This document shows, piece by piece, positions 2,405-51,542 of a stretch of 60,799 bases of DNA. Source of the stretch: Basidiobolus meristosporus CBS 931.73 (taxonomy: Eukaryota > Fungi > Basidiobolomycota); contig MCFE01000537.1 of the NCBI GenBank assembly GCA_002104905.1, positions 1 to 60,799 of the forward strand. The letters run 5' to 3'. How positions within the stretch are numbered: the first letter of the stretch is position 1; every line of letters starts with the position of its first letter. Under the pieces are notes generated by a model. The model was not told the DNA's origin. It did no database searches and saw only the letters and a list, made by a program, of their open reading frames with translations. Made by a program: the position numbers and the translations under genes.

Positions 2405-3325
2405 TTACATCTGGGCCAACTGGTTTTGAACGACTGCCTTGTGGATTGCATTCCCACCGGAACTCTGCTCAAGAGGCATGAAGATCACTTTGGTTCCTGG
2501 GCTCTTGCTCATTGAGCTTAATGTTTCCAAATAGCGTATTTGCATGGCGGCAGGTGTATTCAAGATCTCGGCCGCTTCACGCATTAATTTTGCCGAGTCA
2601 ACCTCGGCTTGAGCAGATATGACCTTGGACTCACCAATTCTCTTTTGGGTAGCCGCACTCGAAAGCGACTCCTGCAGCTCTTTGGAGAACTCCAAGTCCT
2701 TGATCAGTATTGACTCAATGGTAACGCCCCATTCCCTAGCTGGGATATCAATCATCTCACGGATATCATCGGCGATAGTTTCTCGATTTTCAATGCAATC
2801 CTGTAATACCCGAGTTCCAAGGACGCCCCTCAGGGTGGTTTGGGTTCGCTCCATGAGGGCCTGACGGACGTCACTGACCCCAAACAATGACTGGTATGGA
2901 TCTACGACGTGATAGTAGACAACCGAATCTATTTTGATATTCACATTGTCCTTGGTCATGATGCGGATGTCTTCAATTAAGGCAATTTGGACCTTGATAT
3001 CAACCTGATGCAGCCGCTCCGTGAATACGTTCACGCTAGTCAATCCGGGGTCGACACACTTGTAGACCCGACCAAAACGTGACACTAGGCCGACATATCC
3101 TTGGTCCACCTCCTTGTTAGGGTTAGGACAGCAGAAGCAGCCTGGGATGGATCCAAATGCTCCGAAGAGATTCCCTAGAGATTGCAAAGCAACGCCGTAG
3201 AAACCGGTTACGGGCTCGACAGGGATTTCTTTGGCAAACGATTTCGACATAACATGATTAGTTGGCTGGGAAGTGATCTCGGGTGTGGGTTGCTGTGGAT
3301 TCGATGTGGATGGCCCTTTGGACAT
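2405..3325 (-). CDS. Stomatin / SPFH (band 7) family membrane protein, intronless
   Basis: TKDNVNIKIDSVVYYHVVDP, QTTLRGVLG, WGVTIESILIKD, AAEILNTPAAMQIRYLETL. First ATG in the ORF is at 3325; the track start at 3340 is TTG. Confidence 0.95.
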   Translation of the reverse strand: MSKGPSTSNPQQPTPEITSQPTNHVMSKSFAKEIPVEPVTGFYGVALQSLGNLFGAFGSIPGCFCCPNPNKEVDQGYVGLVSRFGRVYKCVDPGLTSVNVFTERLHQVDIKVQIALIEDIRIMTKDNVNIKIDSVVYYHVVDPYQSLFGVSDVRQALMERTQTTLRGVLGTRVLQDCIENRETIADDIREMIDIPAREWGVTIESILIKDLEFSKELQESLSSAATQKRIGESKVISAQAEVDSAKLMREAAEILNTPAAMQIRYLETLSSMSKSPGTKVIFMPLEQSSGGNAIHKAVVQNQLAQM

Positions 3326-4431
3326 AGCTGAATTAGTCAAGTGGTTTGACTGGATTATGGTAAGTGGTAAGGAGGGCGGATGCGCAAGTCACTTTTATAT
3401 TTCAGAACTGGCGATAGGCTCGAAGCTGCAGCATGCGGATCAGCTATGTCAATAAGAAACACCAGCAATCACATGTATACAATAGAAGTTCCAGTTGTAC
3501 AACCTTAGCGTATCATTATCTACCGTTTGAGCCCAACTGATAGCTGCCTCCATCGATGAGCCAATCAAAAGGGCCTTCTTATTTGCTAGGTTTTAACCGA
3601 ATCCCTTTTGATGAAGCTGCATTGTCCCGCACTCTTTCGTGCCCATTGGGGTCACCTGATGCGTGGAAACAGGGTCGGCCCAAATAGGGAAGGGTTCTCT
3701 TGGCATCAGAGTCAGCACACCCACTCGCCCTATTGACACCGCTCTTATTAGGTGTAAGGTAAGCGAACACAATGTATTCGCGATGCAGCTTGCAGTGAAA
3801 CACTCTACTGAATGGTTGTTTGTTTTCTACCGAATCTATCCCAACCCGCGAGCCATGCCTTGTGCAAAACATAACCGGTCTACACAGCATCTCCTCTATC
3901 CTCAACCTTTGCTAAACATGAAGCGTCGACCGTCCTTACAGGGCCAAATATAGAACTTCTATCCGCCGCCTCAGGCCAAGCTGGATGGCACAGTCCACCT
4001 CCACGGGCGTTACTGATCCATCGGGGCGATGTTTCCTTATTGGATAACAAAGTATAGCCTATGCGCCATGATCCCATCTTACGGACCAGACGTCGCGACT
4101 ATCATGCTCACATACCTCTCCTAGGCCCGGATCAAGTGTGCCATCCTACTTGCCGCATGCCTGGGTGCTACTGCACACCGGTCAGTTTGCATTCCTGAAA
4201 AGGGTTGTGTGGCTGGCTGGGCTAATCCCAGGGATTTTATTACATGGAATTTAGTGGCACCAACGAATCTAAGCATGAATGATCAATATGTCCACTGCAT
4301 CCATGAGATGCTATCTAAAAATGGCCATTATGTTTGGTTTGTAGGAAGGTTGAGACGGCAGGTACATGAGCCCTAATACAAAGATGATCTAATTGAGGTT
4401 TTGCTGGTTCATCTCTATTGTGCCAAAGGAA

Positions 4432-4941
4432 TCAGTGGTTGTTGCTCCCCGAGGGCTTTTTGGTAAAGGTGTTACGCCCCAGCACATCATCTCTGGTGAG
4501 TTCAGCCAGGCACATGATTCGTTCGATGATAGATTCATCAATACACAGGTCGCTGATGGCGTTCCTCAAGTTGTCCATGACAGAGTCGAAGTCAGCATCC
4601 TTGAGATCCAGCACTCGTTTGTGAGCAGCCCTCATATGCTTGGTATTGATAGGCTTTCCTCCGAACAGGTGGATCAAAAATAGGGTTTGCATACGATGCA
4701 AACGCTCTACATTCACGCCGAGAAAGAATTTGCATGTCGCAGGAGAAGTCAAGTTGTAATGAGCGAAATTAAGGGCGATCTTCTCAACCTGCACCTCCCC
4801 AATTAGCTCCAGCAGTGTATCACTCCCAAGCTCCAAGCAGTTGTTGGCGATGGACTCCAGAGAGCCTAGAGCATGGCCCGAGAATGGGCACACCAGTTTG
4901 TCGTCTATAAATTGCTGATTTGAACATTGGGCAGGCATCAT
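4432..4941 (-). CDS. Group I truncated (2/2) hemoglobin with a short N-terminal extension, 169 aa, intronless
   Basis: KFFLGVNVERLHRMQTLFLIHLFGG, MRAAH (proximal His F8), FDSVMDNL, TRDDVLG match TrHb1/GlbN. ATG 4941 chosen because TATAAAAG lies about 53 nt upstream. Confidence 0.9.
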   Translation of the reverse strand: MMPAQCSNQQFIDDKLVCPFSGHALGSLESIANNCLELGSDTLLELIGEVQVEKIALNFAHYNLTSPATCKFFLGVNVERLHRMQTLFLIHLFGGKPINTKHMRAAHKRVLDLKDADFDSVMDNLRNAISDLCIDESIIERIMCLAELTRDDVLGRNTFTKKPSGSNNH

Positions 4942-5001: not shown

Positions 5002-6746
5002 CTCACGCATCCAATACATTCTATGGGAACATTGCATCCTGGGTAGTGCACCATGCTGCCTCTTCAAGAAGAGGACTCCATGCCCACTAGGGATCTGGAT
5101 CTAGTGCCCGTAATACTAAACATATTCGGCGTCATGTTTCTGACTATAGGATCTGCGATCGAAAAATATCAATGGGGAGGCGTGAAGTGAAATGGTTTAT
5201 TTGTTCCATAAGTTCTATACAAGTAATCTGTACACGTTACATTGACCGAACTTTAAATTTTCCGAGTAAACAGACATACATTTCAGCCGCGGCAAGTCAG
5301 GCTGTAGGTCACGAATGTGCCCGTTGGTTGGCGATGGGGAGGATGGTTCTCTACGACTGGAGCGTATTATGAGTAGCCTTCTACCTTAACGACGGAGGGG
5401 TATCACATTTGTTTGCGGGATATTCGGCTTGTGCAGATTGCTCTTTGGATCGTAGCTCTGTGTTGTGTCTCCATTACCAATACTTGTCGTAGTGGAATCT
5501 TAGTGCCTGCATCTATACGTTGATCTATTGAAGCATGTAGTACTAATAGGTTGGTCATTCGATATCCGCTACTCAGAGATTTGGCAATAATGCTGTCATA
5601 CATCAGAGAATTGGCCCCATATGAGAACTAGCAATCAAGCGATTATTTTGGGCCTCTGTTCCATCTCTGATCCTCATGTACCAAGTCAAACGCCGACGTC
5701 GATCTCTGTTATTTGAAGATGGTCCCATATTCTGAATTAGGCATGAGGGCTGGATGCTGCAGCCGCTCCAATTAAAATGGCTGAATGGCTTCTAGTTTAG
5801 AGTAACAGTTGGAGAGAGAGACTAGCAACCCCGCGTATTCTATAAGGATCCCAAGCTTCATCTTGATTCGCGGATTCCCATACGGTTCCTGGAAGAATGA
5901 CGGGATCGTAGTAGATGGATTTAGCTTGAATAATTCAAGGCTTGTGATCTCGGAACCAGCCGAGCGGTGCTACTACGCTTGATAAGATATTGCAACACTA
6001 TCTGGCCATCTCCCACACAGAATCTCTCACCAGAACCTGGCGCCAAATTTACCGCTAATTCCCATCCAACCAATTCAATCTTCGCTGAAACACCACCAAT
6101 AATATCCCAGAGATGGCTAGAGGGAGAGCCTCTCGGCTCAATGGCTTGGTTTCTCCCAGGGGGATCGCAAAACTACTACAAATGGAGCGGGTGGAAAAGA
6201 TATCCAGCTCGGAGCTAAGCTGTATCTTCGCATAGATCGATTCATTCTCTACCATTCCATTTACATCATGCCTATTCTCGCACCCTTCGAGGTGGCAAAG
6301 GTCTCTACGCCTATACCAAGACCACTGTGGCCGGAAGATTTATTTACGGTAGACACGCAACAAGTGCCCATTCATCTCGGATGGAAAGATCGTGGTCACA
6401 CCCAAACGGCCTCTATTCATGGTCACTAGGGTACATCAATGTATACAAAAGATTGGGGTTCGGGCTTTCCACCCGAGGGATTTATAATGGTGGCAAACGA
6501 TATTAAAGATTATACTAAGAGGAAGGCAGCAGGAAACCATGCGAAATTAATTAGAAAGCCCCGGATGTAAAGACTTCCGGACAAGCAAGGCGTGTGTTGA
6601 CCAGGCCAAAGGATATTGACTGTGTATGGTTTCTCCTGGTACGTATCTGACGAGGATGAGAGCAATAGAGTGAGAAGGTACATGGGGTTGATGGTACATT
6701 AGTTTTAAGTGTGAAGTGGAAGGTTTGGGCTAGCAATAGCCGCTCA

Positions 6747-7658
6747 TCAAACCAACGCTACCAAGGCTTGTATGACACCTCCTGCGGGAACGTTGATTTC
6801 TTGGATGGTTGTACTGTTGTTCAGCATCTTACCCATGTAGAAAAAGCGAGCATTTACCCTACTTGGATCTACGTTTTCGACCCCGCATACCTTGCTTTTC
6901 ACCACCTCCATGTTATCGAGCGGACTAACCTTGATTCGAATATCCTTCCCGGTACTTAGCCGGACCACAAGCTCCTCCCCTTCGTCGCTTGTGCTGGTTG
7001 AGGTCTGGGGCATGTACATGGGATAGCCATATGGCTCAGACTCTGCATGTTCGGTGATGGTGATGGTAGGGATTTGTCCAGGGTTGCTTTTGTGGTTAAG
7101 CTCATACTCTGCGCTGGGGTGATTCGGGCTAGAGCCTGGAGTGGGTCTAATGAGGTTCGCGGGCTCAGCAAAGCAATAAATGGGAATGATATAACGGTTT
7201 CCAAGCTCATCGTAGCAACCGTCTGATAAATGGCCGGTGGGAACAGATAAGCGTAGGGAATCAACAATTGATTGCGCCTGGCTTAGATCGGTTGTCTCGC
7301 AGACGGTACGAAGCCTTTGCCAAATTTCACGACGTCCCTGGAAATTCCGACTTGGGGCTTAGATGCGATTGCTAAGGTAAACAAAAATAGCTACTCACTA
7401 CCTCGTATGTGGGTGCAGTCTCCCAGAATTCGTCTCGTTTTGCTTTGAGCTGCTCAAGGGTTAAGGGGGTATCTGAGGTCCAGGTTAAGGATTTCTTCCG
7501 AAGAGGTTTATTGCCTGCCAAGACAACCAGAGTAGGGTTAGGGATTTTGGTGGGGAAGAGTAGGCTTCGAGGGCAAGGAACTTACCTTCGGTGGGTAAAT
7601 AATTCTCTGGGTCATGATTGGTCTCGTTTTCGTCGAGTTGTGAGGAACAGCAACCCAT
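6747..7658 (-). CDS. Ubiquitin domain-containing protein (UBTD1/UBTD2, DC-UbP family), 3 exons
   Basis: Exon 1 MGCCSSQ (donor GTAAGT at 7585). Exon 2 WTSDTPLTLEQLKAKRDEFWETAP. Exon 3 GRREIWQRL...CYDELGNRYIIPIYC plus C-terminal Ubl domain (VRLSTGKDI...RFFYMGKML). Confidence 0.9.
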
Positions 7659-33660: not shown

Positions 33661-34175
33661 AGTGTAATAAAACTCCTGAATGAGTTAACTGAACCTAAGT
33701 GATAACTAAGTGCAGAATTTCAGAATTGTCAAGAGTGACAGAAATATTAGCAGAGAGGTTCTGGTCTAATATTGGTCTTGTATATAGCTGAGTTGGGCTA
33801 TAAAGGCAACAGAGTTGGTTTGCTATGCAGGCTAGGCTTGGTGTTCTTGGGAGTGCTAGGTATGCTAGGCTTGGGTAGATACTAGAACAGAATTGTTGAA
33901 CTCTTAATTTTGCTGAGACACAATCTTAATTTTGGTGAGACACACACTAAACCAAAAGGTTCAGTAAACTTTATTTATACTTTTCTGATCAAGTTGAGTT
34001 GGTATGCACCAAGAGACTGGACTAATTGAAATCTGTTGGGGTGTTAATAGGTACATAAGATAAATGAAATTTTGCATCATTAATCAGATGTCTTGGCTAC
34101 TGCTAAGTGGTTGGAGAGATCTCAGATGACTAATCACCTGGAAAGGCTAATCAGATCAGTTCAGGATGTAATGAC

Positions 34176-34523
34176 TGTTGTAAGAGTCTTGGAGATATTG
34201 GAAGTGATTGGGAGAACAAGTAGATTATGTGGTTCTCATTTAATAATTTATTGAATGTAAAAGTAGTATCTATACTTTTACATGGTCTTGGCATAACATG
34301 CACATAGAATGGTTAAGGAAGGTCCCAAGAACATGTGTACAAAGCTTGGGGCTGCTTGGATAACTTTAAGAATTCTCATGTTCTGGGTACCAGGTATCTT
34401 GGTGAAAATATTTGAAGTAAATCCCAACAAGGAATCTAGTCAGAATTCTCTAGGATTTGAAGGTAATGCTTAAAGTGACTCAGTTAGGTGAATATTTAGA
34501 TGGAGTTACAAACTTTTACAACA
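34176..34523 (-). repeat. 3' LTR of copia element
   Basis: TGTTGTAAGA...TTACAACA; colinear with 38500-38848; adjacent PPT on the minus strand. Confidence 0.95.
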
Positions 34524-37500
34524 CTCCCACTCAGCTAAATGTTCATACTGACTAGTCCTAATTTTGACCTAAGATATTCAAACTTGTCTCTAGCTAATGG
34601 TTTGGTAAATATGTCTGCAATCATTTCATCTGAAGGACAGTAAACTAAGCCAACTAAGTTATCCTCTATAGCTTCATGTATGAAATGATGTCTGATATCT
34701 ATGTGCCAAGTTCTTGCATGAAAAATTCGGAATTCTACCTAATTGTATACATCCTTGGTTTTCTTGAAATAAAGTAATAGGCATTTTTGACATAGGCCTA
34801 AATCTGTAAAAAGCTTTCATAACCACATTGCTTCTTTTGTAGCTTCACAGGCTGCCATATACTCTGCCTCTGCGGTAGAAGGTGCTATGGTTGGTTGCTA
34901 TCTTGAATTCCATGAAATTGCTCCTTTACAGTAAAGAAAGGTGTATCCTGTAGTGGATCTTCTGTCTTCCAAAATTTGTCCCCAATCAGCATCAGATTAT
35001 CCCACAAGATCTGGTTCTGAGTCCGTATAAGTGTATCTTAGGCAGATATCAGCAGTTCCTCTTAGGTATCTGAAAATCCGCTTAACTGCTGCAATATGAT
35101 CAGATGCATAGTTCTGATTATGTTGGCTGACAACTCCCCTGAGTATGTGATATCTAGCCATGTTCCAAGCATGATATATATCAGAATACCGGCCATAGAT
35201 TGATAAGGAAAGTCAGAGCTTTCAGATGGCACCAAGCTCTCTTGATTTGGCTGTGTTTTGACCAAGTTAAGGCTTGTCTCCATTGGGGTAGCTGCCAGTT
35301 TACAGTCTTCCATTTGGTACTTCTTTATTATATCATAAATATACTTGGATTGGCTTAGGGTGATATTCTGGGTACTTCTGCCTATGGAGAACTTTATCCC
35401 TAAGTGGCAACTGAGTTCTCCTAGATTGGACATCCTGAACTCCTTAGATAGGCTGGATTAAGTCTCTTCCAATGTTGCTAGGTTATTGGTGGCTAAAATA
35501 AGATCATCCACATTTAGAGCTAATAGAACTAGATTTGCTCTATCTGGATTACAGTATATACTATAATCAGCATTACACCTTTTGAAACTCAAAGATTCCA
35601 AATGAGAATCTTTCTTGCAATTCCAGGCCCTTGAGGATTGTATGAGACCATATAGAGACTTTTTAAGCTTGCAGACCAAATGGGGGTTATCTTGGCCAAC
35701 AAACCAATCAGGCTGCTCCATATGTACATCCTCATCAAGTTCTCCATTCAAAAATGCAGTTTTTATATCCATTTGACGTATGTAAAAGCTGTATTGGCTG
35801 CAATAGCCAATATCAATCTGATGGAATTAATCTTGGCTACCAGTGCAAAGGTCTGAGTATAGTCAAGGCCTTTTATTTGAGAGTCTCCTTTGGCCACAAG
35901 TCTTGCTTTGTATCATTCAATTGTACCATTGGCCTTGTATTTTGTCTTGAAGACCCATCTGCATCCAATTGATTTTTGGTAGATTGGTAATTTGACCAAG
36001 TCCCAAGTTTGATTTTCCATCAGGGCCTGATATTCCTCAGTCATTGCAGATCCCCAAAACTTTGTGTGAGGGCCATTTATGGCCTCTTTTACAGTCAGTG
36101 GCTCATCAATATGGACTGAATAGGCATAGGCTAAGTTTGTACACTCATTGATATAGTAATTTGGGCTATTTCTTGTCTGGTTGGATCTCCAGGCATTTGA
36201 TACTGGGATGATCACTTCTGGGATATTCCTGGGCACAGGTTTAGGCTGAACCATGGTTGTAGAGTCCTCTGGAGTGAAAAAATTTCATTGTTTTGCTCTG
36301 ATTCATTTCTGACAATTGGTGGACTTGAGATCAGATTTTTGTCATCATATGATGTCATTTTTTATGAAAATTTGAATTCTCATAAAGAAACACTTCCCTG
36401 GACTTGATAAGCTTCATTGCTTTGGTATTGTAGAGTCTGTATGCTTTACTCTTAATGCAGTAGCCCAAAAATATGCATTTTACACTTTTTGGCTCAAATT
36501 TTGACTGATTTTGGGGCAGTTTCTTGGCATATGCTATACACCCATTTATTTTTAGATGTTCTGCCATTGGTCTGTACCAATACCATGCTTTAAATGGAGT
36601 AGAATCACAAAGTATTCTGGTATAACTCCTATTTTAAGGTACACTGCTGTGGCAACTGATTCCACCCAAAACCACAGGATAAGTTTTGATCATGGATCAT
36701 AGATCTTGCCATATCAATTACTGATCTGTTTAGATGTTCTACTACTCCATTTTGTTGTGGGAAGTATGGTACAGTAGTTCCTTGCTTTTCCCAGGAATTT
36801 TGCAGAAGTGGCTGAAAAGTTTTGAGGTTTTTTCTCCACCATTGCCAGAGTGTTTTTTCTTGATTTTTTCACCAGTTTCTCTCCCCACCATGGCTTTGAG
36901 CTCCCTGAGCTTAGACAGAGCTTCTTCTTTTCTCCCCATGAAGTAGACCCATGTGTATCTTGTATAATCATCAACAAAAGTTATTAAATACTTCATCCCA
37001 CCTAAGGATAAATTTTGCATTGGTCCACACAGATCTAAGTGAATTAGATCTAATTTTTCTTACTTTGATCAACCCAGAGCTCTGGAACAGTTGTCTGGCT
37101 TGTTTCCCACTTATGCAGGCTTCACAGTGCTTCAAATTAGCAGGGGGATCAATTTTACTCTGGAAATTAGCTGATCTTTGATCAATTTTTGCAAATAATA
37201 AAAGTTGATGTGCCCAAATCTCCTGTGCCAAAGCATTGGTATTTCTTCATTTAAGTTACTTATATTGGCTTCTGAATATGACAGAATATATGTCAACTTG
37301 TATAGATTCTGATCTCTGATACCCAAAGCAATACGGACACCATTTTGAACAGTGATATTTCAAACAGAATTGTCAAAGCTGGAACTGTGTCCTTCTACAG
37401 TGGCCTTGCTCACTGATAGTAGGTTCTTGGCTATTTCTGGTACATAGGGTACATCTCTAAAGGTGAGTGTATGGCTTCCTTCACTGCTTCTAAGGCCTAC

Positions 37501-38499
37501 TTGGATAGTTTCTTGTCCCACTGCATCAAGTGTTCTATCATCACCCATGAAATCCTTGTTGATTGGAATTTCTTAATATTGGGTAAAAAGTTCTTTTTGG
37601 TGTGTAAAGTATTGAGATGCTCCAGAGTCAATATACCATGTCTGAGAATCCTTGTTTGTGATCATATTTAGTGCAGAGATGAATAGTTTCTCCTCAGTTG
37701 TTGCAGTATTTCCATATTTAGGCTTCTTTTGCTGATTATCACTCTTTTTGAGACACCAGCGTGATGTGTGTCCTTTCCTTTTGCGGTAGTTGCCAAACAG
37801 GTTGCTATTGCCTTTGTAAGGTCTTGGGTGCCTCCTTTGTTGGTTATCATTGCTTATTAAAGCCTTTTCTTCTTCCTTCTTATTGGTGCTTCACTTTCTT
37901 GATTCTTTGTCCAGGAGCCTTCCATATATGTAATTTAAGGTCAAATTATCAGTTCTGGACTCTAGGGCTGATACAAGGCCCTTGAGCTTGTCTATCAGGC
38001 TATTCAGGATGGTTACTATCACATCCACTTCAGAAGTTGGTATGCCCACAGATTCCATCTCATCTACCAGCAGGGTATATCTGTTGATTACATTTTTCAT
38101 TTCTTCTCCTGGCTGCATCTTTGTAGTAGAGAACTTTTGTCTCAGATACATTTTCTTAGCAGCTGAACATGACTGGTAGGTGTCTTCTAATGCGTTCCAG
38201 GCATTTTTTGCCATTTTTGATCTTGAGAATTGAATCAGCAATTTGTCTTTAAATCAAAGCAAATGCAGTTAAAGGCACTTTGTTCTTTCTTCTGGTACTT
38301 TAAGGCTTCCTCTCCCACGTTTTTAGGAGGGCATTCTTCTCTCATGACAATATCCCAAAGGCTTCTTTCTTGTAGCAGGATCTTCAACTTCACCTTCCGT
38401 GCTTGGTAGTTAAGTCCATCCAACTTTTCAGCAGAGTGGAAAGTTCCAGTAATAGCAGTAGTTGACATTGCAGAGAGTGACAGCTTGGAGCTCATAGCC

Positions 38500-38848
38500 T
38501 GTTGTAAGAGTCTTGGAGATATTGGAAGTGATTGGGAGGACAAGTAGATTATGTGGTTCTGATTTAATGATTCATTGAGTGTAAAAGTAATACTTACACT
38601 TTCTCATGGTCTTGGCATAAGAACCATGTAGAATAGGCTAAGGAAGGTCCCAAGAACATATGTGCAAAGTTTGAGGCTGTTTGGACTACTTTGATGATTT
38701 TCATGTTCTGGGTACCAGGTATTTTGGTGAAAATATCTCAAGTAAATCCCAACAAGGAATTTAGTTGGTATTCTCTAGGATTTGAAAGTAATCATATAAG
38801 TGACTAAGTTAGGTGAATATTTGGGTGGAATTACAAATTCTTACAACA
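38500..38848 (-). repeat. 5' LTR of copia element
   Basis: TGTTGTAAGA...TTACAACA; followed on the minus strand by GGCTATGAGCTC (PBS-like). Confidence 0.95.
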
Positions 38849-38989
38849 ATGACCACATGAAAATTGATCAGGTGTGACAGCTGAAAATAGATGCTGAGAA
38901 GTGATTGAATAAACCATAACAGAGATTAATTATGTTAAAGTTAGGGAAAATCAGTTAGGGTACTAGATTTTCTAACACAGTGAAATTGG

Positions 38990-39670
38990 CCAAGTTTAAA
39001 TGTTGATGCACAACAGTCAGCAGTATGTCTTAAGAAACTCAGGCACTTCAAATAATCTATCTTGCAATCTGGATTCTTGATAACTCTTTGGGACCATGTA
39101 GAGATTTTTTGAGCTTGCAAAGCGTAGGGGCTTATCTCATTCAATGCACCCATGTGGTTGGCGCACATATGTGCCCTGAGTAGACTTCCCATTCAAAAAT
39201 GCAGTTTGCACACTCATTTGATGAACAAAAACCTTAAATTTGAGTGCACAAGCCATTATTCATCTTATGGTATTAAACTTAACCACTAATGCAAAGGTAT
39301 CAGCGTAGTCTAGCTCATTAGCTTCAGAGTATTGTTTAGCTACAAGTTTGCCTAAGTATCTTCCATCTGTGACAACAGCCATATATTTTGTGTTGGATAT
39401 TCATCTGCATCAACCAATTTGTGGTCAATTGGTGATTTAATCTGGTTCTGAGTATGCATATCTACTTGGGCCTGATACTCTTCATTTATTGCAGATCTTC
39501 AAAGCATTGTCTGAGGGCTATTTAGGGCCTCTTTACTATCAGAGGTGCTTGGTATGGAATTCCTTGGCATAGGCTAGGTATATGCACGCATTAAGATAGT
39601 AATTTGGCCCATCTCTAATATGGCAGAATCTTCTGGCTTGTAATTCTAGAATGATAACATGTCTGGGCAC
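38990..39670 (-). mobile_element. Older decayed copia RT fragment
   Basis: LCKLKKSLHG and a SAINEEYQA-type region, similar to 35600-36200 but more degraded. Confidence 0.75.
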
Positions 39671-39679
39671 ATTGGACTA

Positions 39680-40730
39680 TGTTGCTGTCAAATGTGTGAG
39701 ATCCATAGGGTATATTTCATAGTTCTACCACATTATTGTTATCAAAATGCCAACACCAAGAGCATTGTCTTCCCAGTAAGCAAATCTACAGAAGGCAGCA
39801 TGTAATTGCAGCAAAGTTGGTAAGCTTTCAGCCATTGTCTGGATTACCAAATATATTGGAAACCAGAGATACTTAAGATAGAGGGTACTTGCTAGAGTAA
39901 AGCTTTCCACTAGGTACAATGCATATGATTTCAAAATATCATAATACTAAAAACCAAGTTGTACATGGGTCATTTCTAGCTAAATGTGCCATACAAGATA
40001 CTGGCAAAATTTGAAAGAATTAGCAAGATATTATAGAGTATCTGCTACCCAATGAACTTCTCATGGGCTCCAATGCATATTTATACTCATATGTAACAAT
40101 ACAAATGCAAGGACCGGATGAGCTGGATATGTATATATTCAAGAGCCCTTCTGAAGCCATTTCTACCCAGTGCACATGGGAAGCATTGGGAGTCATATTT
40201 TGACATTGTAGGAATACCTATCCAGAAACAGATCACTAATTTAAGCTTGATGCACTTACAGCTTTTATGCCAGACATTTGTGCCAGGATTTGAGTGGCTA
40301 TACTATAAGCATAAAGCTGAATGCATTGATCACTGTCACTACTGTATCCATTCTCTACTCCATCTTACCTTGTGTGTGGAAAATATTGGTACTTGCTTCA
40401 CCTTGTGGGAATGTTCTATGGAGTGGTTGTGTGGGGAGATACAAAGACAAGTCAAGTTGCAGGTACTATCATACCCCAATCTCATAAAAAATATTACCAT
40501 TGAGACCATCATTGATGTGATGAGTTGTTATATGGAGACACCTATGCCTTTGGCATTATGAAGCTAAGCAGCAGAGTTGGGCAGTGTGCAACAAGCAGCC
40601 AATTCTATTAGGACATATTACTTAAGTATGCCTGGTTTCTCTTTATTACAAGGCAGTTTCTGCACTATTTAATTCAGAATCCACCCACAAAAGTACCAAA
40701 GCACACCTATAAGGGGGACTAGAATCCAAT
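39680..40730 (+). mobile_element. CACTA/EnSpm-like transposase fragment (copy 1)
   Basis: WICIYSRALLKPFLP...FEWLYY...IHSLLHL...IG..FTLWECSMEWLCG; inverted homolog of 41830-42960. Confidence 0.8.
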
Positions 40731-41279
40731 AGTTTTTGTTATTTGAGTTGTAGATGGAATATACAAGGTAGTAGTGAGAAGCAAATAAATTAGGGTGATT
40801 CCAATATACCCCCTATGAAAATAATTGTGATGATCCTGCCAAGAGGCCATCACATCTATACAAAGACTGTTTAAAGGAAATGCACCCCAGATTTCACAAA
40901 AAACTTGTACTAAATTTTTCTTCACAGCAACACATAAGTGCTTTTGATTGATTCTTTGCCAATTATCTCAATTTCTGATCCTAGAGACACATCACCTCCT
41001 ACATTTATGGGCATTGGTTAGCTATTACTTCTTTTTCACACACCTTTCATGCTGACACACCCTATGTAAAATAATTTGATCCTGTGGGTGGATCCAATCC
41101 AGATCATCCAACAAGATCCGGTTTAGAGACCATCATAATAACAGCAGCTTGGAATTAGTGACCCTCCTGACAATCTTGTAACAAGATCATGACGGTGTTT
41201 TGCAAATTTTACAGCCAAATAAAGGGATAAAACTTGACAATTTTTGATTGGTGCTGTGAAAATATTTGCATGGTATTGT

Positions 41280-43480
41280 TGCAGTCTTTCAGCACTCCAT
41301 TACTATTTTAAGTGGATCCAGTTGGCCTGAACTTCAAATTGCCTTATATGGCAAGAAACTTGATGGTATTTTGATGGCCTCACAGCAAGACTCTGATGGC
41401 TTTTTCTTGGCAGTATGACGGCCTGCTGCTGGTTCTGTATGATGCTACCGTACCAATTTACCAAATGGTATTTCCTTTTTCTACCTCCCCTTGTGCAATT
41501 CATGTATTCCACTATATAATCACCTTTCTTTATTTGCTTACCTACTACAACCGTGGATATTCCACAAATAGTTTGAATCAAAAAAAACTATGGCCTCCTG
41601 CCTACTGACCTCTACAAATGCGCACACCTGTTGCAATTGACATACTTCTATCACATCAACTTTATGGCTTTTTAGTGTGATACTTGCAAAGTTGCCATAT
41701 ACCTTGTACTGCTGGTAGCATATGCATCTTGCAAACATATGCTTGGTTGTTGCCACTTTGGCCATGAATACCTCCTGAATATTGGCAAAGAGCTTCTTAG
41801 TATTTAGCCAATATATTCCTTCTCCCTGCTGGATTCTAGTCCCCCTTACAGGTGCGCTCTGGCTTTTGTTTGTGTGAATTCTGTATTGAATGGTGTAGAA
41901 TTTGGCTTGTGACCACAAGAAATCTGGCATATCTTGGTGAAGTTTTCCTGATAAAAATTACTTGCTTGTTGCACCCAACCCAACTTTGCATTACTTGACT
42001 GAATACCCATGCATTGGGGCTGTTTAGCTTTGTAATGCCATAGGCATAGGTGTCTCCATGTGCACATTTGTCCTCAGTACTTTCCAACTCTTTCTGGCTG
42101 TCCTCTATGTGCCAACTCATCACATCCATGACGGACTTGAAGGTAATATTCTTGATGAGATTGGGATATGGTAGTACCTGCAACTTGACTTGTCTTCCTA
42201 TCTCCCACACATCTGCTCCATAGGAAACTCCCAAAAGGTGAAGCAAGGCCCAATATTCTCCACACACCATGCAAGATGGAGTAGAGAATGGATACTGTAG
42301 TGGCAGAGATCTACGCATTCAGCTTTATGTTTGTAGTATAGCCACTTAAATCCTGTCACAAACTCCTCACACAACAGCTGTAGATGTGTCAAGTTGGCAT
42401 TGGTGATCCGCTTCTGGATAAATATTCCTACAATGTCCATATATGACTCCCAATGCTTCCAATGTACTCTTGGTAGGAATGGCTTCAGAACACCACTTGA
42501 ATAAATACATATCCAGCTCATCCAGTCTTTGCATTTGTATTGTCACATATGCATATGAATATTAAGTGGAGCCTGTGAGAAGTACTTAAGGTAGCAGATA
42601 CTCTATAATATCTTGCCAATTTTTTCAAACTTCTCTGGTATCTCAAAGGGCTCATTTAGCTTGAAACGCCCCATGTACAACTTGGTCATCAGTATAGGGA
42701 TATTGTTGAAAAGCAAATGCATTGCTCCCAGTGGAAAGCTTTTGCTCCAACAGATACCCTCTGTCTTAACTATCCCTGGTTTCCAACTGATTCCATATTC
42801 TGGCCAGTGGCTTATAGCTTGCCAACTTTACTGCAATTGCATGCTTGATTCTGTACATTCTCTCTGTGGATAGATGTTGTTTTTAATGCTGGTGTTTGGG
42901 TAATAATAATGTGTGTGAGTTGGGGAGTAAATCCCCTGGATCTCACACACTCAACAGCAATACCATCCATTGTGCCCAGAAAAACCTGTTATCTTGCTGA
43001 TGGCTGGGGTATCCCCAATGCAGATAATTATATGTGCTTTTATATGATGGCCATTAACCGTTATCCTGCTGGAAAGCATACAAAATTTATCCAGCAATGG
43101 ATACAGGTAGCTATCTAGGTTGGATGGTGATTTAGGCCCAGATACCAGTGAGACTACCATTGATTTATTGCTCTGATACTGTAAGGTGGGTGGCAGATTC
43201 AGATTGATGAGAATCAGTGGCTAGCAGAATTTGCTGGTAGAGTACTTGTTTAATGAGAATCCATCAAGTGCTAAAGCAAATGCATGGTCATACATACCTT
43301 CAAAGTAGCCTTTGCTTCTTAGCTGTTTGTAATGTTTGCCATTGAATATATTAGACTTGTCCTTGTAATACTTCCTATGCTGTCTGCATGTTCCATGGCT
43401 GAGAGGCTTGCCACAGTAGCCACATGGGCTTTTTTCTCTTCTCTTATGGCATTGAGTCAAAGTAGTCTTGTCCATGGGGC
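41280..43480 (-). mobile_element. CACTA/EnSpm-like (CMC) transposase pseudogene, most complete copy (copy 2)
   Basis: IFNGKHY...FALALDGF, GPKSPSNLDSYLYPL, IGDTPAISKITGFSGHNGWYCC, HSLLHLAWCVENIGPCFTFWEFPMEQMCG; motifs typical of Transposase_21/DUF4218-type fungal CMC elements. Confidence 0.85.
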
Positions 43481-43697
43481 AAACAGTTTGACCTTCAACA
43501 ATGTGAAGCTATTATATCATTTTTTGGTCAATACTCATGTGAATTTAAGACAGTCTTGTATTTGAGACATTGCACCTACATGAATGTAAGATTCAATGAT
43601 GACCCACCATAGTAAGAATCATAAATAAAATTGTGGCACCACATACACACAAATATGTAACACTATTTCCCCTTTGGTTTGACTCACTTCCATATAC

Positions 43698-45044
43698 ATG
43701 CCACCAAAAAATAAAGCAAAGTTGTCTGGTTCTCAACCAAACCCCACCACTGATGACAACAGAAGAATGGTTGGACAACAGCTTGCTTTGACAATCAGTG
43801 CAACAAGCAGGGCTACATCCAAAAAAGGCCCTGTGGACAGTGTGCCCATTGAAGGTAATAATGTGGACTCCTCAGGCTCTCAGCCAAGTAGGCAATTGAG
43901 AAGCTCTGTGGAGCCATAAGCTGGCCATTATGCTCAGGCAGATTAGAATGTAGCAAATGCAGTACCCTCAGTTGAAGATCAGCAGGTGGCCATGATAACA
44001 TCACCACCACCCATATTAGGAACTATGTTGTCAGCTCATACCAAAGCATTAATGAAGCAATTAGTTGCAGTGGCTGATAGGATAGATGAAATGGCCCAGA
44101 GAGATCAGGCGGTAGTCCAGAAATAGAATGAGTGGATAATACATGTAGAGCAATCAATATCCCAGGTAGGGAAAGCAGTATCTTTGCTGCAGAGAAGGAA
44201 CTCAAGTAGCTCAATGTCACAGCCCAGAATTGAGCCATTTCTTGATGTAACAGCAGAGGAACACCATACAGTCTTTGAAGCACAACAACAGTGCCCAAAG
44301 ATAAAGCCCACAGAAAAAGCTATCACAGTGTGGGAGGGAGACATTGTGGTGTTTATACCAAAGCCTAAAAATCAGAAGACTTTGAAGATCTGTGAAGCTG
44401 TTGAGTGCAATAATAAAGAGTGGGCTAATATATAAGAGGCCGTCAGAAGTCTAGCACACCGTTGCCTTAAGGCCAGCATACCATGGGACCATCAGGAACT
44501 CAAGGCCAAGCAGAATGCACTTGACTTGTTCCATGAGCATTATCCTGGATTCAAACGGGCAAACAAATTTTGGGCCAGCATTGATATGCTAAGAAAGTAT
44601 CTTAAGAATAGCAGAAACTATCAAAGGCAGAAGAACAAGGGTGCCATGGCTAAAAACCAGCAGCTTCTTTGAGAGCCAGTTACATGCAGGGCAAAAAGCT
44701 CCAGACAAGCGTCAAAGAGATGTCAGGCAGCTGGAAGAGTGCCAATTAAGGGCAAGTAGACAGACATGGATGCACCAGCACAATATTTATCAAGGAAAAA
44801 GCGTGGTACCACTCAAGAAGCACCCAGTCAAAGCAGCAGTGAAGGACCTGGCAATGATAAAAACCAGCTGCTTTTACAGGAGCCCATCACAACTACAGTT
44901 GAGAGCTCAAAACAAGATGAAAAGAAATGTCAGGTTGCCAGAAGAGTGCCAATAAGGGACAAGCAGGCCAAAACAGATTTGTCAGAGCAGAATTTATTCA
45001 GGAGAAAACATAGTTCTTCACAAGCATCATCTGTATCCAATTGA
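43698..45044 (+). pseudogene. Decayed 449-codon accessory ORF divergent from the CACTA transposase
   Basis: Track ORFs at 43698, 44184 and 44766 share one frame; 6 internal stops and no frameshift. Coiled coil followed by a helical domain (AVRSLAHRCL...PWDHQ...YPGFKRANKFWASIDMLRKYLKNSRNY). The 3' end runs into copia sequence at about 45025. Confidence 0.75.
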
Positions 45045-47237
45045 TTATTGGTTACTACTAATTTGGCTAAGTCCCAAGTTTGTTTTTCCATATGGGCATG
45101 ATACTCCTCAGTCATTGCAGATCTCCAGAAGTTTGTCTGAGGGCTATTTAGGGCCTCTTTTACAGTCTGGGGTTAATCAATATGGACTGAACAGACAAAG
45201 GTTAAGTTTGTACTACCATTTGTTTAATATGTTGAGCTATTTGTGGACTTGCAAAATCTCTGGGTCTGGGAGACTAAAATGATCACTTCTTGGATGTTCT
45301 AGGCACTGACTCAGGCTGCACTTAAAGTTGCACAGTTCTCTGGAGTGAGGAAATTTTCATTGCATTATTCTGACTTAATTCTGACCATTGGTAGACCTGA
45401 GATATGATACTTGTCATTATCTAGGTCATTTTTTGTGAAAAATTCAATTTATTAAGATAGCATTGCTTGGCTTGCTCAGCTTCTTTGCTTTTGTATTGCA
45501 GAATCTGAAAACCTTACTCATATTGCAAATGCTCCAAAATATGCATTTCACACTTTTGGCTCAATTTTGATGGATTTCTGGCTGGTTTCTTGGCATGTGA
45601 TGTGCACCAAAGTGTTCTTAGATGCTCTCTACCTGGCCTGTATCCAAGACATGCCTCAAATGGAGCAGAAGCACAAAGTAATCTGCCATAGCTCCTATTT
45701 TCAGGATATACAGCGGTAGTAGCTGATTCCACCAATAATCAAAAGATAATTGTAGATCATGGATCATAGATCTTGCTGTATCAATAGTTGATCTGTTTGC
45801 ATATTCTGCCACTCCATTTTGCTGTGAGATGTATGGTACAGTGGTCTCTTGCTTTATCCCAAGAGCTTTGCAGAGTTGGATGACAAGTTTTGAGATATAT
45901 TCCCCACCATTGTTGGAGTGTATTTTCTTGATTTTTGCCAGTTTCTCTCTCCACCATGGCTGTAAGCTTCCTGAGCTTTGACAAAGCTTTTTCCATGCTT
46001 TCCATTCAGTAGACCATATGTATCTTGTAAAATCATCATTCATGGTGATTTCTTGCTTCATCCCACATAAGGATAAATCTTTCATAGATATACACAGATC
46101 TGAGTGAATTAGATCAAATTTTTGCCCAATATGTATCAACCCAGAGCTCTTGATCTGCTGTTGGCCTTGAGTCCCATTTGTGTAGATTTCATAGTGCCTC
46201 AATTCTTCTAGGGGATCAATTTTAACTTTGGAAATTATCAGATCTTTGACCATTTTGCTCAAATAATCACAGTTGATGTGTCCAAATCTTCTATACCAAA
46301 GCATTGATGTTTATACATTTAAGTTATTTGTGTAAATTGCAATACTTGACACCCAAAGCAACATGGGCACCATTTTGATCAGTGATCCTGCATCCAGGGT
46401 AGTCAAACCTGAAACTGAGAATTTCTGCTGTAGCCTTGCTTACAGATATTAGGTTCTTGACTATTTTTGGTACATAGAGTACATCTCTGAAGGTAAGTGT
46501 GTGGCTTCCATCACTGCTTCTGATGCTCACCTGAATAGTTCCTTCTCACACTGCATCAAGCGTTTTAATGTCACCCATGATAGCCTTCTTGATTGGAATC
46601 TCCTCATATTAGGTAAAAAGATCATTTTAGTGTATAAAATGTCAAGACACTCCAGAGTCAGTATACTGTGTCTGAGAATCCATGTATGTGGTCATATTTA
46701 GTGCAAATATGAAAAGTCTATCATCAGTTGATGGAGCATTTCCCTATATAGGCTTTTTGTGGTTACTATCTCTTGTTTGAGATAAAGGCCTGATGTCTGT
46801 CCTTTGCTTTTGTAGTAATTGAAAGACAGGTTGCTATTGTCATAAAGGGACTTGCATACCTCTGTTGTTGGTTATTACTGCTTATTAAAGCATTCTCTTC
46901 TTCCTTCTTGTTTATGCTTAATTTTCTTCATTCAGCATCCAGAAGCCTTCCTCTATGTAACTTGAGGTCAAATTCTCAGTTCTGGTCCCTAGGGCTAATA
47001 CAAGGTCCTGTAACTCATATATTTGGCTCTCACTTGCTAATTAATTTTTATATGGTCTGTGCATAACTATCACATAGAATAGGCTAGCAAGGTTTCAAGA
47101 ATATGTGTGCAAAGTTTGGGTCTGATTGCATAACTTTGAGGTCTTTTATGTACTGCATACCTTATATATTTGTGAGAATATTCCAGATAAGTCCCATCAA
47201 GAAGTTTGGTTAGTATTCACTAAGATTTGCAGGTAAT
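45025..47237 (-). mobile_element. Truncated copia, same family as 34176-38848, with partial 5' LTR (about 47060-47237)
   Basis: LWYRRFGHINC, DLIHSDL, QQNGVAE, SAMTEEY...TWDL. RT core and most of gag deleted; LTR remnant matches 38620-38800. Confidence 0.88.
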
Positions 47238-47615
47238 AGACTTGTTTTGTTGTATAGTGCCACATGAAGCCATGAGTGCCAAATGATACAACAGTGTGCC
47301 AGAGAGGCCAAATGGACCTATATTTATTCACAGAGTGTGAGTCAAAGCTCCTTATCTTCATGCAAAGCAGCCCCTGTGTTTCACCCATTTTGCTGGAGAT
47401 AATCCACTTTTTGACTTTTTTTTGGGACCTGTGTTGTGCAAGATGTTTAAGTGCACAAAAGACTGAATACTTGCATCTGGTACTCAGTACCAATGGCACC
47501 AAAACTCAAGCTTCTGTGGCATGCAACATGTCACAACAATGAATGTCACCATCTTTGTCCACTGGCACTATCTGGCTCTATAAGTACTTTGTGTAAGCTT
47601 TACTTTAGATGTAAT
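47238..47615. mobile_element. Half copy of the fold-back element (one arm plus spacer)
   Basis: AAT|AGACTTG...; colinear with 53121-53500; inserted in the copia LTR remnant. Confidence 0.85.
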
Positions 47616-47629
47616 CCTAACCCTAACTT

Positions 47630-48378: not shown

Positions 48379-48629
48379 GAGTCTGCATATTTACTCTCAA
48401 TGAGTGCTCTTTTAATATGCCCATCTTTGGATGTAGATATGCTTGTCGCACTGAGTGCAACAGCAGGCTGTAGTCCCACTGTTCTCCTGCTGCTGTTAGT
48501 AGTTGGGTTTGGTTAGGAATCAAAGAGATTGTTCAATTATTTGGTGCCATATATAATGATTTTGGTCAACCAGTTGAGAAATAGTACTACAAATACAGGT
48601 GCATATGGTGCCACTGCTTTATTTATAAT

Positions 48630-48660
48630 AGACTTGTTCCATTGGATATTACTACATAAT
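48630..48660. mobile_element. Isolated terminus of the fold-back element
   Basis: AAT|AGACTTGTTCCATTGGAT, identical to the reverse complement of the terminus ending at 53853. Confidence 0.65.
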
Positions 48661-51540: not shown

Positions 51541-51542
51541 TG

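What the first reader, a model, noticed from the sequence alone, without database searches (positions are those of the whole stretch)
4432..4941. Fungal group I truncated hemoglobin lacking TyrB10, with an N-terminal CPF motif
Seen: by manual alignment to M. tuberculosis HbN (EDFYVRVL...FF...RLKGKQ), B9-B10 reads Phe-Ala (LNFAHYNL) instead of Phe-Tyr. LeuE7, GlnE11 and HisF8 are retained, and the first GG motif is reduced. A roughly 40-aa extension carries VCPFSGH. The gene is intronless among intron-rich neighbours. Known: TyrB10 stabilises bound O2 for NO dioxygenase activity, Cys-Pro motifs can bind regulatory heme, and TrHb1 is patchy in fungi. Inference: a non-canonical ligand sensor or heme-regulated globin, possibly horizontally acquired.
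Basis: partly seen in the sequence, partly recalled or inferred. Interest (0 to 1): 0.7.

Follow-up and report, generated by a model that had tools for sequence, protein, structure and literature searches.

The report
Basidiobolus truncated haemoglobin lacking TyrB10
This is an intact gene of the fungus Basidiobolus for a small haem-binding "truncated haemoglobin" that has replaced the tyrosine which normally holds bound oxygen with alanine. It carries a conserved Cys-Pro-Phe motif on a flexible N-terminal arm; the protein belongs to an old family of early-diverging fungi and was not recently acquired from bacteria.

Summary
Window 4941-4432 (minus strand) is one uninterrupted 169-codon ORF for a group I (N-type) 2/2 haemoglobin. 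The evidence is Pfam Bac_globin, PDB trHbN hits, and an AlphaFold model with rmsd 1.4-1.8 A to solved trHb1 structures.

Paralogue and profile-to-PDB alignments give these haem-pocket residues:
- B9-B10 = Phe59-Ala60
- CD1 = Phe72
- E7 = Leu81
- E11 = Gln85
- F8 = His107
- G8 = Val121

Tyr62 is B12, not B10. All ten other Basidiobolus family members in the domain alignment read F-Y at B9-B10 (mostly F-Y-H-Y). The B. ranarum orthologue (67% identical, syntenic) also has Ala, with the same GCT codon. Synonymous sites are saturated (pS 0.78) and pN is 0.14, so the gene is under constraint.

The horizontal-transfer idea fails. The nearest relatives are all Zoopagomycota, then chytrids, and an AU test rejects grouping with the sampled bacteria (p 0.0009). 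The paralogues checked are also intronless.

The CPF motif is not chance. There are 18 CPF outside globin domains against 0.3 expected, and the motif aligns 21-24 residues before helix A across paralogues. It resembles haem-regulatory motifs; haem binding is untested.

The public gene model covers only the last 67 residues. An earlier unchecked first-reader note (s1-227472) flagged a similar arm elsewhere in this genome.

The parts
4432..4941 (-). Complete single-exon coding sequence, 169 codons plus stop (stop at 4432-4434), of a group I truncated haemoglobin.
   Evidence: ORF and translation. The orthologue's start is fixed by an in-frame stop three codons upstream. Pfam, PDB and fold evidence.
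4822..4941 (-). N-terminal pre-A extension, residues 1-40, predicted flexible.
   Evidence: pLDDT 45-68 over residues 1-40. pN is 0.35 here against 0.14 in the globin domain.
4873..4893 (-). V-C-P-F-S-G-H (residues 17-23). The Cys-Pro-Phe codons lie at 4882-4890. This is the haem-regulatory-motif-like element.
   Evidence: Identical in the B. ranarum orthologue. It aligns in one column with the CP motifs of seven other Basidiobolus paralogues, 21-24 aa before helix A. CPF occurs 18 times against 0.30 expected outside the globin domains of the family.
4471..4821 (-). 2-on-2 globin domain, residues 41-157.
   Evidence: HMM envelope. pLDDT mostly above 90. Foldseek TM to target 0.87-0.89 against 1dly, 3aq5 and 1dlw.
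4762..4764 (-). Codon GCT = Ala60 at topological position B10, which is Tyr in canonical trHb1.
   Evidence: Family and profile-to-PDB alignments. The codon is GCT in both species and TAT or TAC in paralogues.
4687..4701 (-). E-helix distal residues: Leu81 (E7, 4699-4701), Met84 (E10, 4690-4692) and Gln85 (E11, 4687-4689).
4621..4623 (-). His107, the proximal haem ligand F8.
   Evidence: The only invariant column of the 78-sequence alignment. His in 339 of 344 domains.
4432..4635 (-). Extent of the public, truncated 67-aa gene model (starts at Met103).
   Evidence: P0011 is identical to the C-terminal 67 residues and lies on a contig of exactly 60,799 bp.

Best explanation
The locus encodes a functional, cytosolic, haem-binding group I (trHbN-type) truncated haemoglobin of Basidiobolus. 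The genome is most likely B. meristosporus.

It is one paralogue of an intronless trHb1 multigene family that Basidiobolus inherited vertically. Related genes occur across Zoopagomycota and chytrids.

After a duplication inside the genus, and before B. meristosporus and B. ranarum split, this copy changed TyrB10 to Ala by two nucleotide changes (TAY to GCT). Almost everything else in the pocket stayed the same: PheB9, PheCD1, LeuE7, GlnE11, ValG8 and HisF8. That pocket is otherwise the one of M. tuberculosis HbN.

In LeuE7/GlnE11 trHbN proteins TyrB10 is the only strong hydrogen-bond donor to the bound ligand. The inferred consequence is a more open, more apolar distal pocket with faster ligand entry and much faster O2 release. 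The copy would then be a sub- or neo-functionalised low-O2-affinity form. It would suit rapid, reversible binding of gases (O2, NO, CO) or other distal-site chemistry, not tight O2 retention for NO dioxygenation.

The flexible N-terminal arm carries a family-wide Cys-Pro-Phe motif at a fixed distance from helix A. The most likely role is that of a haem-regulatory-type motif, as in haem oxygenase-2. It would either bind a second, labile haem through the thiolate or act as a redox-sensitive thiol that tunes the globin's haem occupancy or ligand access.

Shown: gene integrity, fold, residue assignments, conservation, phylogeny and motif enrichment. Inferred: haem binding, ligand kinetics and the motif's function. 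The confidence given applies to the whole statement: the gene, family and vertical-descent parts are near certain, the kinetic shift is moderately likely, and the haem-regulatory role of the arm is about one in three.
For: - Intact ORF and globin identity.
- Model and fold matches.
- B10 = Ala: paralogue alignment, a 344-domain HMM alignment and a profile aligned to Tetrahymena Y25.
- Orthologue in B. ranarum: 67% identical, keeps FAHYNLTSP and LVCPFSGH. It is syntenic on both sides, with a ubiquitin-like gene upstream and an SPFH gene downstream.
- Constraint: pS 0.78 (saturated) against pN 0.14 in the globin domain.
- Specificity of the change: only three residues are fixed in this lineage against residues invariant in the five other core paralogues. 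They are Y60A, L110V and A120S.
- Codon: the same GCT in both species.
- Tree: WIN plus orthologue 100/99; core Basidiobolus clade 99/98; 22 Zoopagomycota rows split from chytrids, protists and bacteria at 96/84 (taxa).
- AU test: rejects a clade with the sampled bacteria.
- CPF motif: 18 observed against 0.30 expected; proximal copy 21-24 aa before the domain in six proteins and aligned in one column.
- Literature: TyrB10 is the most conserved distal residue and the direct H-bond donor, and in LeuE7 proteins it is the only strong one (PMC7082302). TyrB10 and GlnE11 mutants of Mt-trHbN raise kon about tenfold (PMC4720485). CP motifs sit in flexible loops, and a nearby His favours six-coordinate haem (PMC10377097). 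The HO-2 CP motifs form a redox switch that tunes haem affinity (PMC2742820).
Against: - No expression data: no RNA run was listed.
- Haem binding and ligand kinetics are inferred from homology only.
- The Pfam score is only just above threshold, although PDB and fold evidence are strong.
- About 17-20% of trHb domains naturally lack TyrB10 (PMC4720485). The substitution alone therefore does not force a new function.
- The N-terminal arm is modelled with low confidence and shows no docked conformation.
- The CPF motif is shared by TyrB10-containing paralogues, so its role is not specific to this gene.
- In HO-2 the CP motifs were first reported not to bind haem directly (PMC2742820). Resemblance therefore does not predict the mechanism.
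Confidence: 0.6

Rival explanations
1. The gene is a decaying or non-functional paralogue. On this reading the loss of TyrB10 is relaxed selection on a redundant copy, and the truncated public gene model reflects a dead gene.
For: The family is redundant: at least 11 members were found across the two Basidiobolus species. The public annotation covers only 67 aa. No RNA evidence is available. The branch leading to this pair is longer (0.44) than its neighbours in the tree.
Against: The ORF is intact in two species whose synonymous sites are saturated (pS 0.78), while pN is 0.14. Haem-contact residues are all kept. Only three lineage-specific fixed changes exist against invariant paralogue positions. 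Ala uses the identical codon in both species. Synteny is preserved.
Confidence: 0.06
2. The gene was recently acquired by horizontal transfer from a bacterium, as proposed for other Basidiobolus genes. That would explain the lack of introns and the patchy distribution of trHb1 in fungi.
For: The gene and its paralogues are intronless. A 2012 census found group 1 T globins in only 2 of 165 fungal genomes (PMC3287990). Basidiobolus is reported to have gained secondary-metabolism genes by transfer (PMC7466969, title and abstract only).
Against: All ten nearest proteins whose origin was looked up are Zoopagomycota, and the next labelled relatives are chytrids. Verrucomicrobial trHb1 sit far away in the tree, with protist sequences. 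The AU test rejects Basidiobolus plus the sampled bacteria (p 0.0009). The locus is syntenic between two species and flanked by ordinary eukaryotic genes. GC content there is unremarkable. An ancient transfer into an early fungal or eukaryotic ancestor is not excluded; it is the general model of PMC3287990.
Confidence: 0.04
3. The nearby Tyr62 (A-H-Y) takes the B10 role, so the distal pocket is effectively canonical.
For: A single-sequence phmmer alignment to Tetrahymena trHbN shifted the register by one residue and put His61 under Y25. This shows that pairwise alignment alone is ambiguous.
Against: Eight of the nine other Basidiobolus domains in the first tree, and partial P0018, carry both tyrosines (F-Y-[HNK]-Y) in ungapped alignment with F-A-H-Y. 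Tyr62 is therefore an independent family residue at B12. The 78-sequence profile places the first Tyr on Tetrahymena Y25. Residues two apart on a helix face nearly opposite sides (established helix geometry). Helix B is modelled continuously over residues 49-65 with pLDDT 96-98.
Confidence: 0.03
4. The CPF motif has nothing to do with haem. It could be a docking site for a partner such as a reductase, a metal or lipidation site, or a structural cap of the pre-A region.
For: Haem binding is untested. The extended form CPF-x2-P-[LI]-x-N-P-x-E in several paralogues goes beyond the minimal CP motif. The fixed 21-24 residue spacing from helix A suggests a defined contact with the globin domain rather than a free linear motif. 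The Kickxellomycotina members lack it.
Against: Cys-Pro followed by a hydrophobic residue, in a flexible region and often in several copies (three in P0008), is the published signature of haem-regulatory motifs (PMC10377097, PMC2742820). It is attached here to a haem protein. The motif recurs in N-terminal, linker and C-terminal positions in different lineages, as short linear motifs do.
Confidence: 0.3

Closest known systems
Mycobacterium tuberculosis HbN (GlbN; PDB 1idr) and its TyrB10 mutants (2gkm, 2gl3)
   Same: Group I 2/2 fold. The same distal set except B10: PheB9, PheCD1, LeuE7, GlnE11, ValG8 and HisF8. It also has a pre-A N-terminal extension.
   Different: B10 is Ala here, so the protein is a natural equivalent of an engineered TyrB10 mutant. 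Sequence identity is only about 20%. The pre-A arm is unrelated and carries a Cys-Pro-Phe motif. The first Gly-Gly motif is reduced.
Eukaryotic single-domain trHb1 of Tetrahymena pyriformis (3aq5), Chlamydomonas eugametos (1dly) and Paramecium caudatum (1dlw)
   Same: These are the best sequence and structure matches: 2.4e-8 by phmmer, TM to target 0.87-0.89, rmsd 1.4-1.8 A.
   Different: They have TyrB10 and GlnE7 and no CP-bearing extension.
Chlamydomonas THB family (THB1 4xdi; THB4 6bme; THB11 6td7), which has N- and C-terminal extensions
   Same: A eukaryotic multigene trHb1 family whose members differ in distal chemistry and carry flexible extensions that modulate behaviour (PMC7082302). 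THB11 also has LeuE7 and GlnE11.
   Different: The THB proteins keep TyrB10 and have LysE10, which is the sixth ligand in THB1, 2 and 4. The fungal family has MetE10. No CP motif is described for the THB proteins in that paper.
Haem-regulatory (Cys-Pro) motifs of haem oxygenase-2
   Same: Cys-Pro motifs in a flexible tail next to a haem-binding catalytic core, where they tune haem affinity through a thiol/disulfide switch (PMC2742820). From my own memory, not checked here, both C-terminal HO-2 motifs also read Cys-Pro-Phe.
   Different: The host fold is unrelated. This protein has one CP motif plus a second conserved Cys (Cys6), and up to three CP motifs occur in paralogues. No biochemical evidence exists for the fungal motif.
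Previously reported fungal group 1 T globins (Batrachochytrium dendrobatidis; Allomyces macrogynus; PMC3287990)
   Same: trHb1 in early-diverging fungi. Chytrid sequences are the next labelled relatives outside Zoopagomycota.
   Different: That census predates the Zoopagomycota genomes. It reported no Basidiobolus family, no B10 variant and no CP motif.

Membership tests
Group I truncated (2/2) haemoglobin, trHbN / Pfam PF01152 Bac_globin | Significant sequence match to the family model | tested here: met
   Pfam 22.4 bits against a cut-off of 21. PDB trHbN hits down to 2.4e-8. A family profile hits 3aq5 at 4.9e-49.
Group I truncated (2/2) haemoglobin | 2-on-2 helical sandwich fold (B/E over G/H helices) | tested here: met
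   AlphaFold2 model with pLDDT 84. The top 18 Foldseek matches are all group I trHb, TM to target up to 0.89, rmsd 1.4-1.8 A.
Group I truncated (2/2) haemoglobin | Proximal HisF8 | tested here: met
   His107 is the only invariant column of 78 sequences. His in 339 of 344 domains.
Group I truncated (2/2) haemoglobin | PheB9-TyrB10 pair | tested here: not met
   PheB9 is present and B10 is Ala60. TyrB10 is typical rather than obligatory: 83% of 344 domains here and 80% in PMC4720485. Membership by homology and fold therefore stands, and the protein is a B10 variant.
Group I truncated (2/2) haemoglobin | Gly-Gly motifs at the AB and EF hinges | tested here: inconclusive
   The first motif is reduced to Gly-Glu with a one-residue deletion in the whole core Basidiobolus clade. 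The second, G94-G95, is present and nearly invariant.
Group I truncated (2/2) haemoglobin | Group I rather than group II or III: no TrpG8; PheCD1, GlnE11 and PheE14 present | tested here: met
   G8 Val121, CD1 Phe72, E11 Gln85 and E14 Phe88. Group II structures rank lower.
Group I truncated (2/2) haemoglobin | Binds haem b | not testable with these tools
   Inferred from conserved haem-contact residues only.
Haem-regulatory motif (CP motif) | Cys-Pro dipeptide followed by a hydrophobic residue | tested here: met
   C18-P19-F20. Conserved in the orthologue and in paralogues.
Haem-regulatory motif (CP motif) | Lies in a flexible, exposed region | tested here: met
   pLDDT 57-61 for residues 11-30, outside the globin core. 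This is a prediction, not a measurement.
Haem-regulatory motif (CP motif) | More frequent and better conserved than chance | tested here: met
   35 CP against 10.8 expected, and 18 CPF against 0.30 expected, in 15,702 extra-domain residues. About 11 independent lineages remain after collapsing close relatives (my count).
Haem-regulatory motif (CP motif) | Transient Fe(III)-haem binding through the thiolate (band near 370 nm), or redox switching, with a regulatory effect | not testable with these tools
   Needs spectroscopy on recombinant protein and a C18A variant.
Recent bacterial horizontal transfer | Nearest relatives bacterial; absent from related fungi | tested here: not met
   Nearest relatives are Zoopagomycota and chytrids. 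The AU test rejects a clade with the sampled bacteria.

The most novel reading that the evidence does not exclude
Zoopagomycota truncated haemoglobins would be the first globins with built-in haem-regulatory motifs. The Cys-Pro-Phe arm, at a fixed distance from helix A, would capture labile haem or cap the distal site through a thiolate. It would hand haem to the globin pocket, or gate it, in a redox-dependent way.

In this AlaB10 paralogue the emptied distal pocket, with Met at E10 and a His five residues after the Cys, might allow an internal sixth ligand. That would turn the globin into a haem, redox or gas switch rather than an O2-retaining NO dioxygenase.
Probability: 0.2. Interest if true: 0.7.

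Novelty: new variant of a known kind. Interest (0 to 1): 0.42.

Why it matters
- It corrects a public gene model: 67 aa annotated against 169 aa real.
- It extends group I truncated haemoglobins from two isolated early-fungal cases (PMC3287990) to a vertically inherited family across Zoopagomycota and chytrids. It removes this gene from the list of Basidiobolus transfer candidates.
- Two testable points come out of it. The first is a natural, selected TyrB10-to-Ala variant in an otherwise HbN-like pocket, sitting next to TyrB10 paralogues in the same genome. This offers a clean comparison for what TyrB10 does in vivo.
- The second is a conserved Cys-Pro-Phe arm on a globin. No paper in the searched library holds both 'truncated hemoglobin' and 'heme regulatory motif'. 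If the arm binds haem or acts as a redox switch, it would link labile-haem sensing to globin function.

Tried and rejected
- The single-sequence word search found only the B. ranarum orthologue. The exhaustive profile search was needed to see the family.
- The pairwise phmmer alignment to 3aq5 gave a register shifted by one residue at B10. I rejected it in favour of the paralogue and profile alignments.
- My first column-mapping script was wrong because it mishandled insert characters. It was redone.
- dN/dS could not be computed because synonymous sites are saturated. I report raw pN and pS instead.
- No RNA run was listed. Expression, transcript ends and the absence of introns at RNA level remain untested.
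- The profile word search with the 78-sequence alignment returned mostly generic bacterial trHb1. It served only to supply labelled Verrucomicrobia for the tree.
Side-chain orientation of Ala60 and Tyr62 could not be measured directly.
- The origin of the metagenomic CPF-bearing relative P0024/P0163 could not be determined.
- Rejected readings: pseudogene, recent bacterial transfer, Tyr62 acting as B10, and the CPF motif as chance.
Full report
**What is there**

On the minus strand, window 4941 to 4432 is one uninterrupted reading frame of 169 codons plus a stop.
- It matches Pfam Bac_globin just above the curated threshold: 22.4 bits against 21.
- By phmmer it matches solved group I truncated haemoglobins. 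Tetrahymena trHbN 3aq5 scores 2.4e-8, followed by cyanobacterial GlbN, Chlamydomonas THB1, Paramecium and M. tuberculosis HbN.
- I built a 78-sequence alignment of relatives. The AlphaFold2 model from it has mean pLDDT 84. Most blocks of residues 41-150 are above 90, and residues 1-40 score 45-68.
- Foldseek's best 18 matches are all group I trHb, with TM to target 0.87-0.89 and rmsd 1.4-1.8 A for 1dly, 3aq5 and 1dlw.

The gene is real and the fold assignment is secure.

**Whose gene it is, and its public annotation**

The only close hit in the word search is a 171-aa hypothetical protein of Basidiobolus ranarum, 67% identical over the full length.
- Its locus is syntenic with the window on both sides. 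A ubiquitin-like-domain gene lies upstream and an SPFH/Band 7 gene downstream.
- In B. ranarum an in-frame stop lies three codons before the start Met. This fixes the start and supports Met1/Met2 at 4941/4938 here.
- A 67-aa protein in the public collections (P0011) is identical to the C-terminal 67 residues. It sits on a contig of exactly 60,799 bp, the length of this window. The public model is therefore a fragment starting at Met103, and the B and E helices and the arm are unannotated.
- Paralogues from assembly GCA_002104905.1 (B. meristosporus CBS 931.73) and an earlier follow-up note (s1-231418) point to B. meristosporus as the source genome.

**The B10 question**

The pairwise alignment to Tetrahymena was ambiguous by one residue. 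The exhaustive profile search settled it by finding a Basidiobolus family: ORY06798, ORX97366, ORX88998, ORX94797 and ORY06316 of B. meristosporus, and KAK9766132, KAK9718620, KAK9764879 and KAK9761873 of B. ranarum.
- Most of them read F-Y-H-Y-N-L-T, with F-Y-N-Y and F-Y-K-Y in two lineages, where this protein reads F-A-H-Y-N-L-T, without gaps.
- The profile of 78 relatives puts that F-Y on Tetrahymena F24-Y25. Y25 is the residue changed in the 'Y25F' structure 3aq7. The Q46E and Q50E structures mark E7 and E11.
- The resulting assignments are Phe59 = B9, Ala60 = B10, Tyr62 = B12, Phe72 = CD1, Leu81 = E7, Met84 = E10, Gln85 = E11, Phe88 = E14, His107 = F8 and Val121 = G8.
- The first Gly-Gly motif is reduced to Gly-Glu with a one-residue deletion. 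This holds for the whole core Basidiobolus clade.

**How unusual is it?**

- Among 344 near-complete domains from the best 150 hits and their cluster mates, B10 is Tyr in 284 (83%), Phe in 26 and Ala in 4.
- Most non-Tyr cases lie in giant tandem arrays of protists.
- A published survey gives TyrB10 in 80% of trHbs (PMC4720485).
- Loss of TyrB10 is therefore uncommon but known in the family at large.
- Within Zoopagomycota, this orthologue pair and the two-domain proteins of Syncephalis and Piptocephalis are the exceptions.

**Is the variant selected?**

- Between the window gene and the B. ranarum orthologue, synonymous sites are saturated: pS is 0.78 in the globin domain and 0.93 in the arm. 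pN is 0.14 and 0.35 respectively. NG86 and YN00 estimates of dS fail for that reason.
- Only three positions are fixed in this pair while differing from a residue invariant in the five other core paralogues: Y60A, L110V and A120S.
- Ala is GCT in both species, and paralogues have TAT or TAC. That means two nucleotide changes made once, before the species split.

This is a specific, maintained change in an otherwise conserved HbN-like pocket, not decay.

**Origin**

In a FastTree of all domains, and in an IQ-TREE of 61 domains, the results were as follows.

| Grouping | Support (UFBoot / SH-aLRT) |
|---|---|
| Window gene + B. ranarum orthologue | 100/99 |
| Core Basidiobolus clade of seven | 99/98 |
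| 22 Zoopagomycota rows split from chytrids, protists and Verrucomicrobia | 96/84 |

- The window pair sits inside the core clade, next to KAK9766132 (branch support 98/70).
- The 22 rows comprise Basidiobolus; Ramicandelaber, Dispira, Spiromyces and Mycoemilia; Syncephalis and Piptocephalis; Entomophthora and Neoconidiobolus; and one unlabelled sequence (taxa).
- Forcing the core Basidiobolus clade together with the sampled bacteria costs 43.5 log-likelihood units (p-AU 0.0009).
- The orthologue and the three paralogues checked are also intronless. Lack of introns is therefore shared within the Basidiobolus family, not a mark of this gene.
- GC content around the gene is ordinary.
- Recent horizontal acquisition is not supported. 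An ancient bacterial origin of eukaryotic T globins, the general model of PMC3287990, is untouched.
- The 2012 census found group 1 T globins in only two fungal genomes (PMC3287990). The present data widen that to many early-diverging fungi.

**The Cys-Pro-Phe arm**

- Residues 1-40 are poorly conserved between the two species, except Cys6 and the block L-V-C-P-F-S-G-H, which is identical.
- CP motifs occur outside the globin domain in most Basidiobolus paralogues, with three CPF in KAK9718620.
- They also occur in the linker of Syncephalis, in the linker and tail of Piptocephalis, in the tail of Entomophthora, and in several unlabelled relatives.
- In 15,702 extra-domain residues there are 35 CP against 10.8 expected and 18 CPF against 0.30 expected from composition. 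After collapsing close relatives I count about 11 independent lineages.
- The proximal motif lies 21-24 residues before the domain start in six proteins. It aligns in one column in eight Basidiobolus sequences, the metagenomic P0024 and Piptocephalis domain 2. An extended form, CPF-x2-P-[LI]-x-N-P-x-E, appears in some.
- The arm is predicted flexible.
- This matches the published description of haem-regulatory CP motifs. They sit in flexible loops, coordinate through the thiolate, and a nearby His promotes six-coordinate complexes (PMC10377097). Here His23 follows Cys18 by five residues.
- The closest functional analogue is haem oxygenase-2. Its CP motifs lie in a tail beside a haem-binding core and form a thiol/disulfide switch that tunes haem affinity (PMC2742820).
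- No paper in the searched library holds both 'truncated hemoglobin' and 'heme regulatory motif'.
- An unchecked first-reader note on another piece of this genome (s1-227472) independently flags a truncated globin with such an arm. It is a lead, not evidence.

**How it most likely works**

Shown: an intact, constrained trHb1 gene with all haem-contact residues, Ala at B10, and a conserved CPF arm.

Inferred from established knowledge of trHbN:
- In LeuE7/GlnE11 proteins TyrB10 is the only strong hydrogen-bond donor to the ligand (PMC7082302).
- Replacing it or GlnE11 in Mt-trHbN raises association rates about tenfold (PMC4720485).
- From my own recollection of the HbN mutant literature, not checked here, such replacements also raise O2 dissociation by one to two orders of magnitude.

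The expected phenotype is a low-O2-affinity, fast-exchanging pocket. That suits a sub-functionalised paralogue better than a classical O2-retaining NO dioxygenase. The arm probably acts as a haem-binding or redox-sensitive regulatory element common to the family. I hold the gene and family statements at high confidence, the kinetic inference at moderate confidence, and the haem-regulatory role of the arm at roughly one in three.

**Limits**

- No RNA run was listed, so expression is untested.
- Model coordinates could not be inspected.
- Taxon labels were available for only about 30 of the relatives. The bacterial sample in the tree is limited to Verrucomicrobia plus one related unlabelled protein.

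**Verdict**

This is a new variant within a known family, of moderate interest.

Noticed in passing
window 4690-4692 (Met84, position E10); relatives P0004-P0066: E10 is Met in 24 of 26 Zoopagomycota and chytrid trHb1 domains. E10 supplies the sixth haem ligand (Lys) in Chlamydomonas THB1, 2 and 4 (PMC7082302). His/Met six-coordination in the fungal family is an untested possibility.
   Followed up: partly
window 4432-4635: The public gene model for this locus is only a 67-aa C-terminal fragment starting at Met103 (P0011, on a contig of 60,799 bp). The full 169-aa ORF is not annotated.
   Followed up: yes
P0002, P0155, P0014, P0003, P0010 (no window coordinates): The highest-scoring non-fungal relatives are giant tandem arrays of trHb1 domains. 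Examples are Lacrimia lanifica (1882 aa, 12 domains), Perkinsus olseni (up to 2375 aa, 16 domains) and Astrephomene (640 aa, 5 domains). Most natural non-Tyr B10 domains lie in such arrays.
   Followed up: partly
L005:3462-7190: A metagenomic eukaryotic contig (ENA ERZ4201065) carries two adjacent trHb1 genes. Their inter-domain linker holds K-K-C-P-F-S-N-N-P-I-K-N-P, closely resembling the Basidiobolus arm motif. The organism is unknown.
   Followed up: partly
window 2405-3340 (-) and 6745-7658 (-): The flanking genes are an SPFH/Band 7 protein (311-aa single ORF) and a ubiquitin-like-domain protein. Both are syntenic with B. ranarum contig JASJQH010007420. In B. ranarum the SPFH region is annotated only as a 73-aa gene.
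   Followed up: partly
window 34000-52000: GC content drops from about 0.47 to about 0.38. Another first-reader note places a CACTA-like element at 41280-45044. Not examined here.
   Followed up: no
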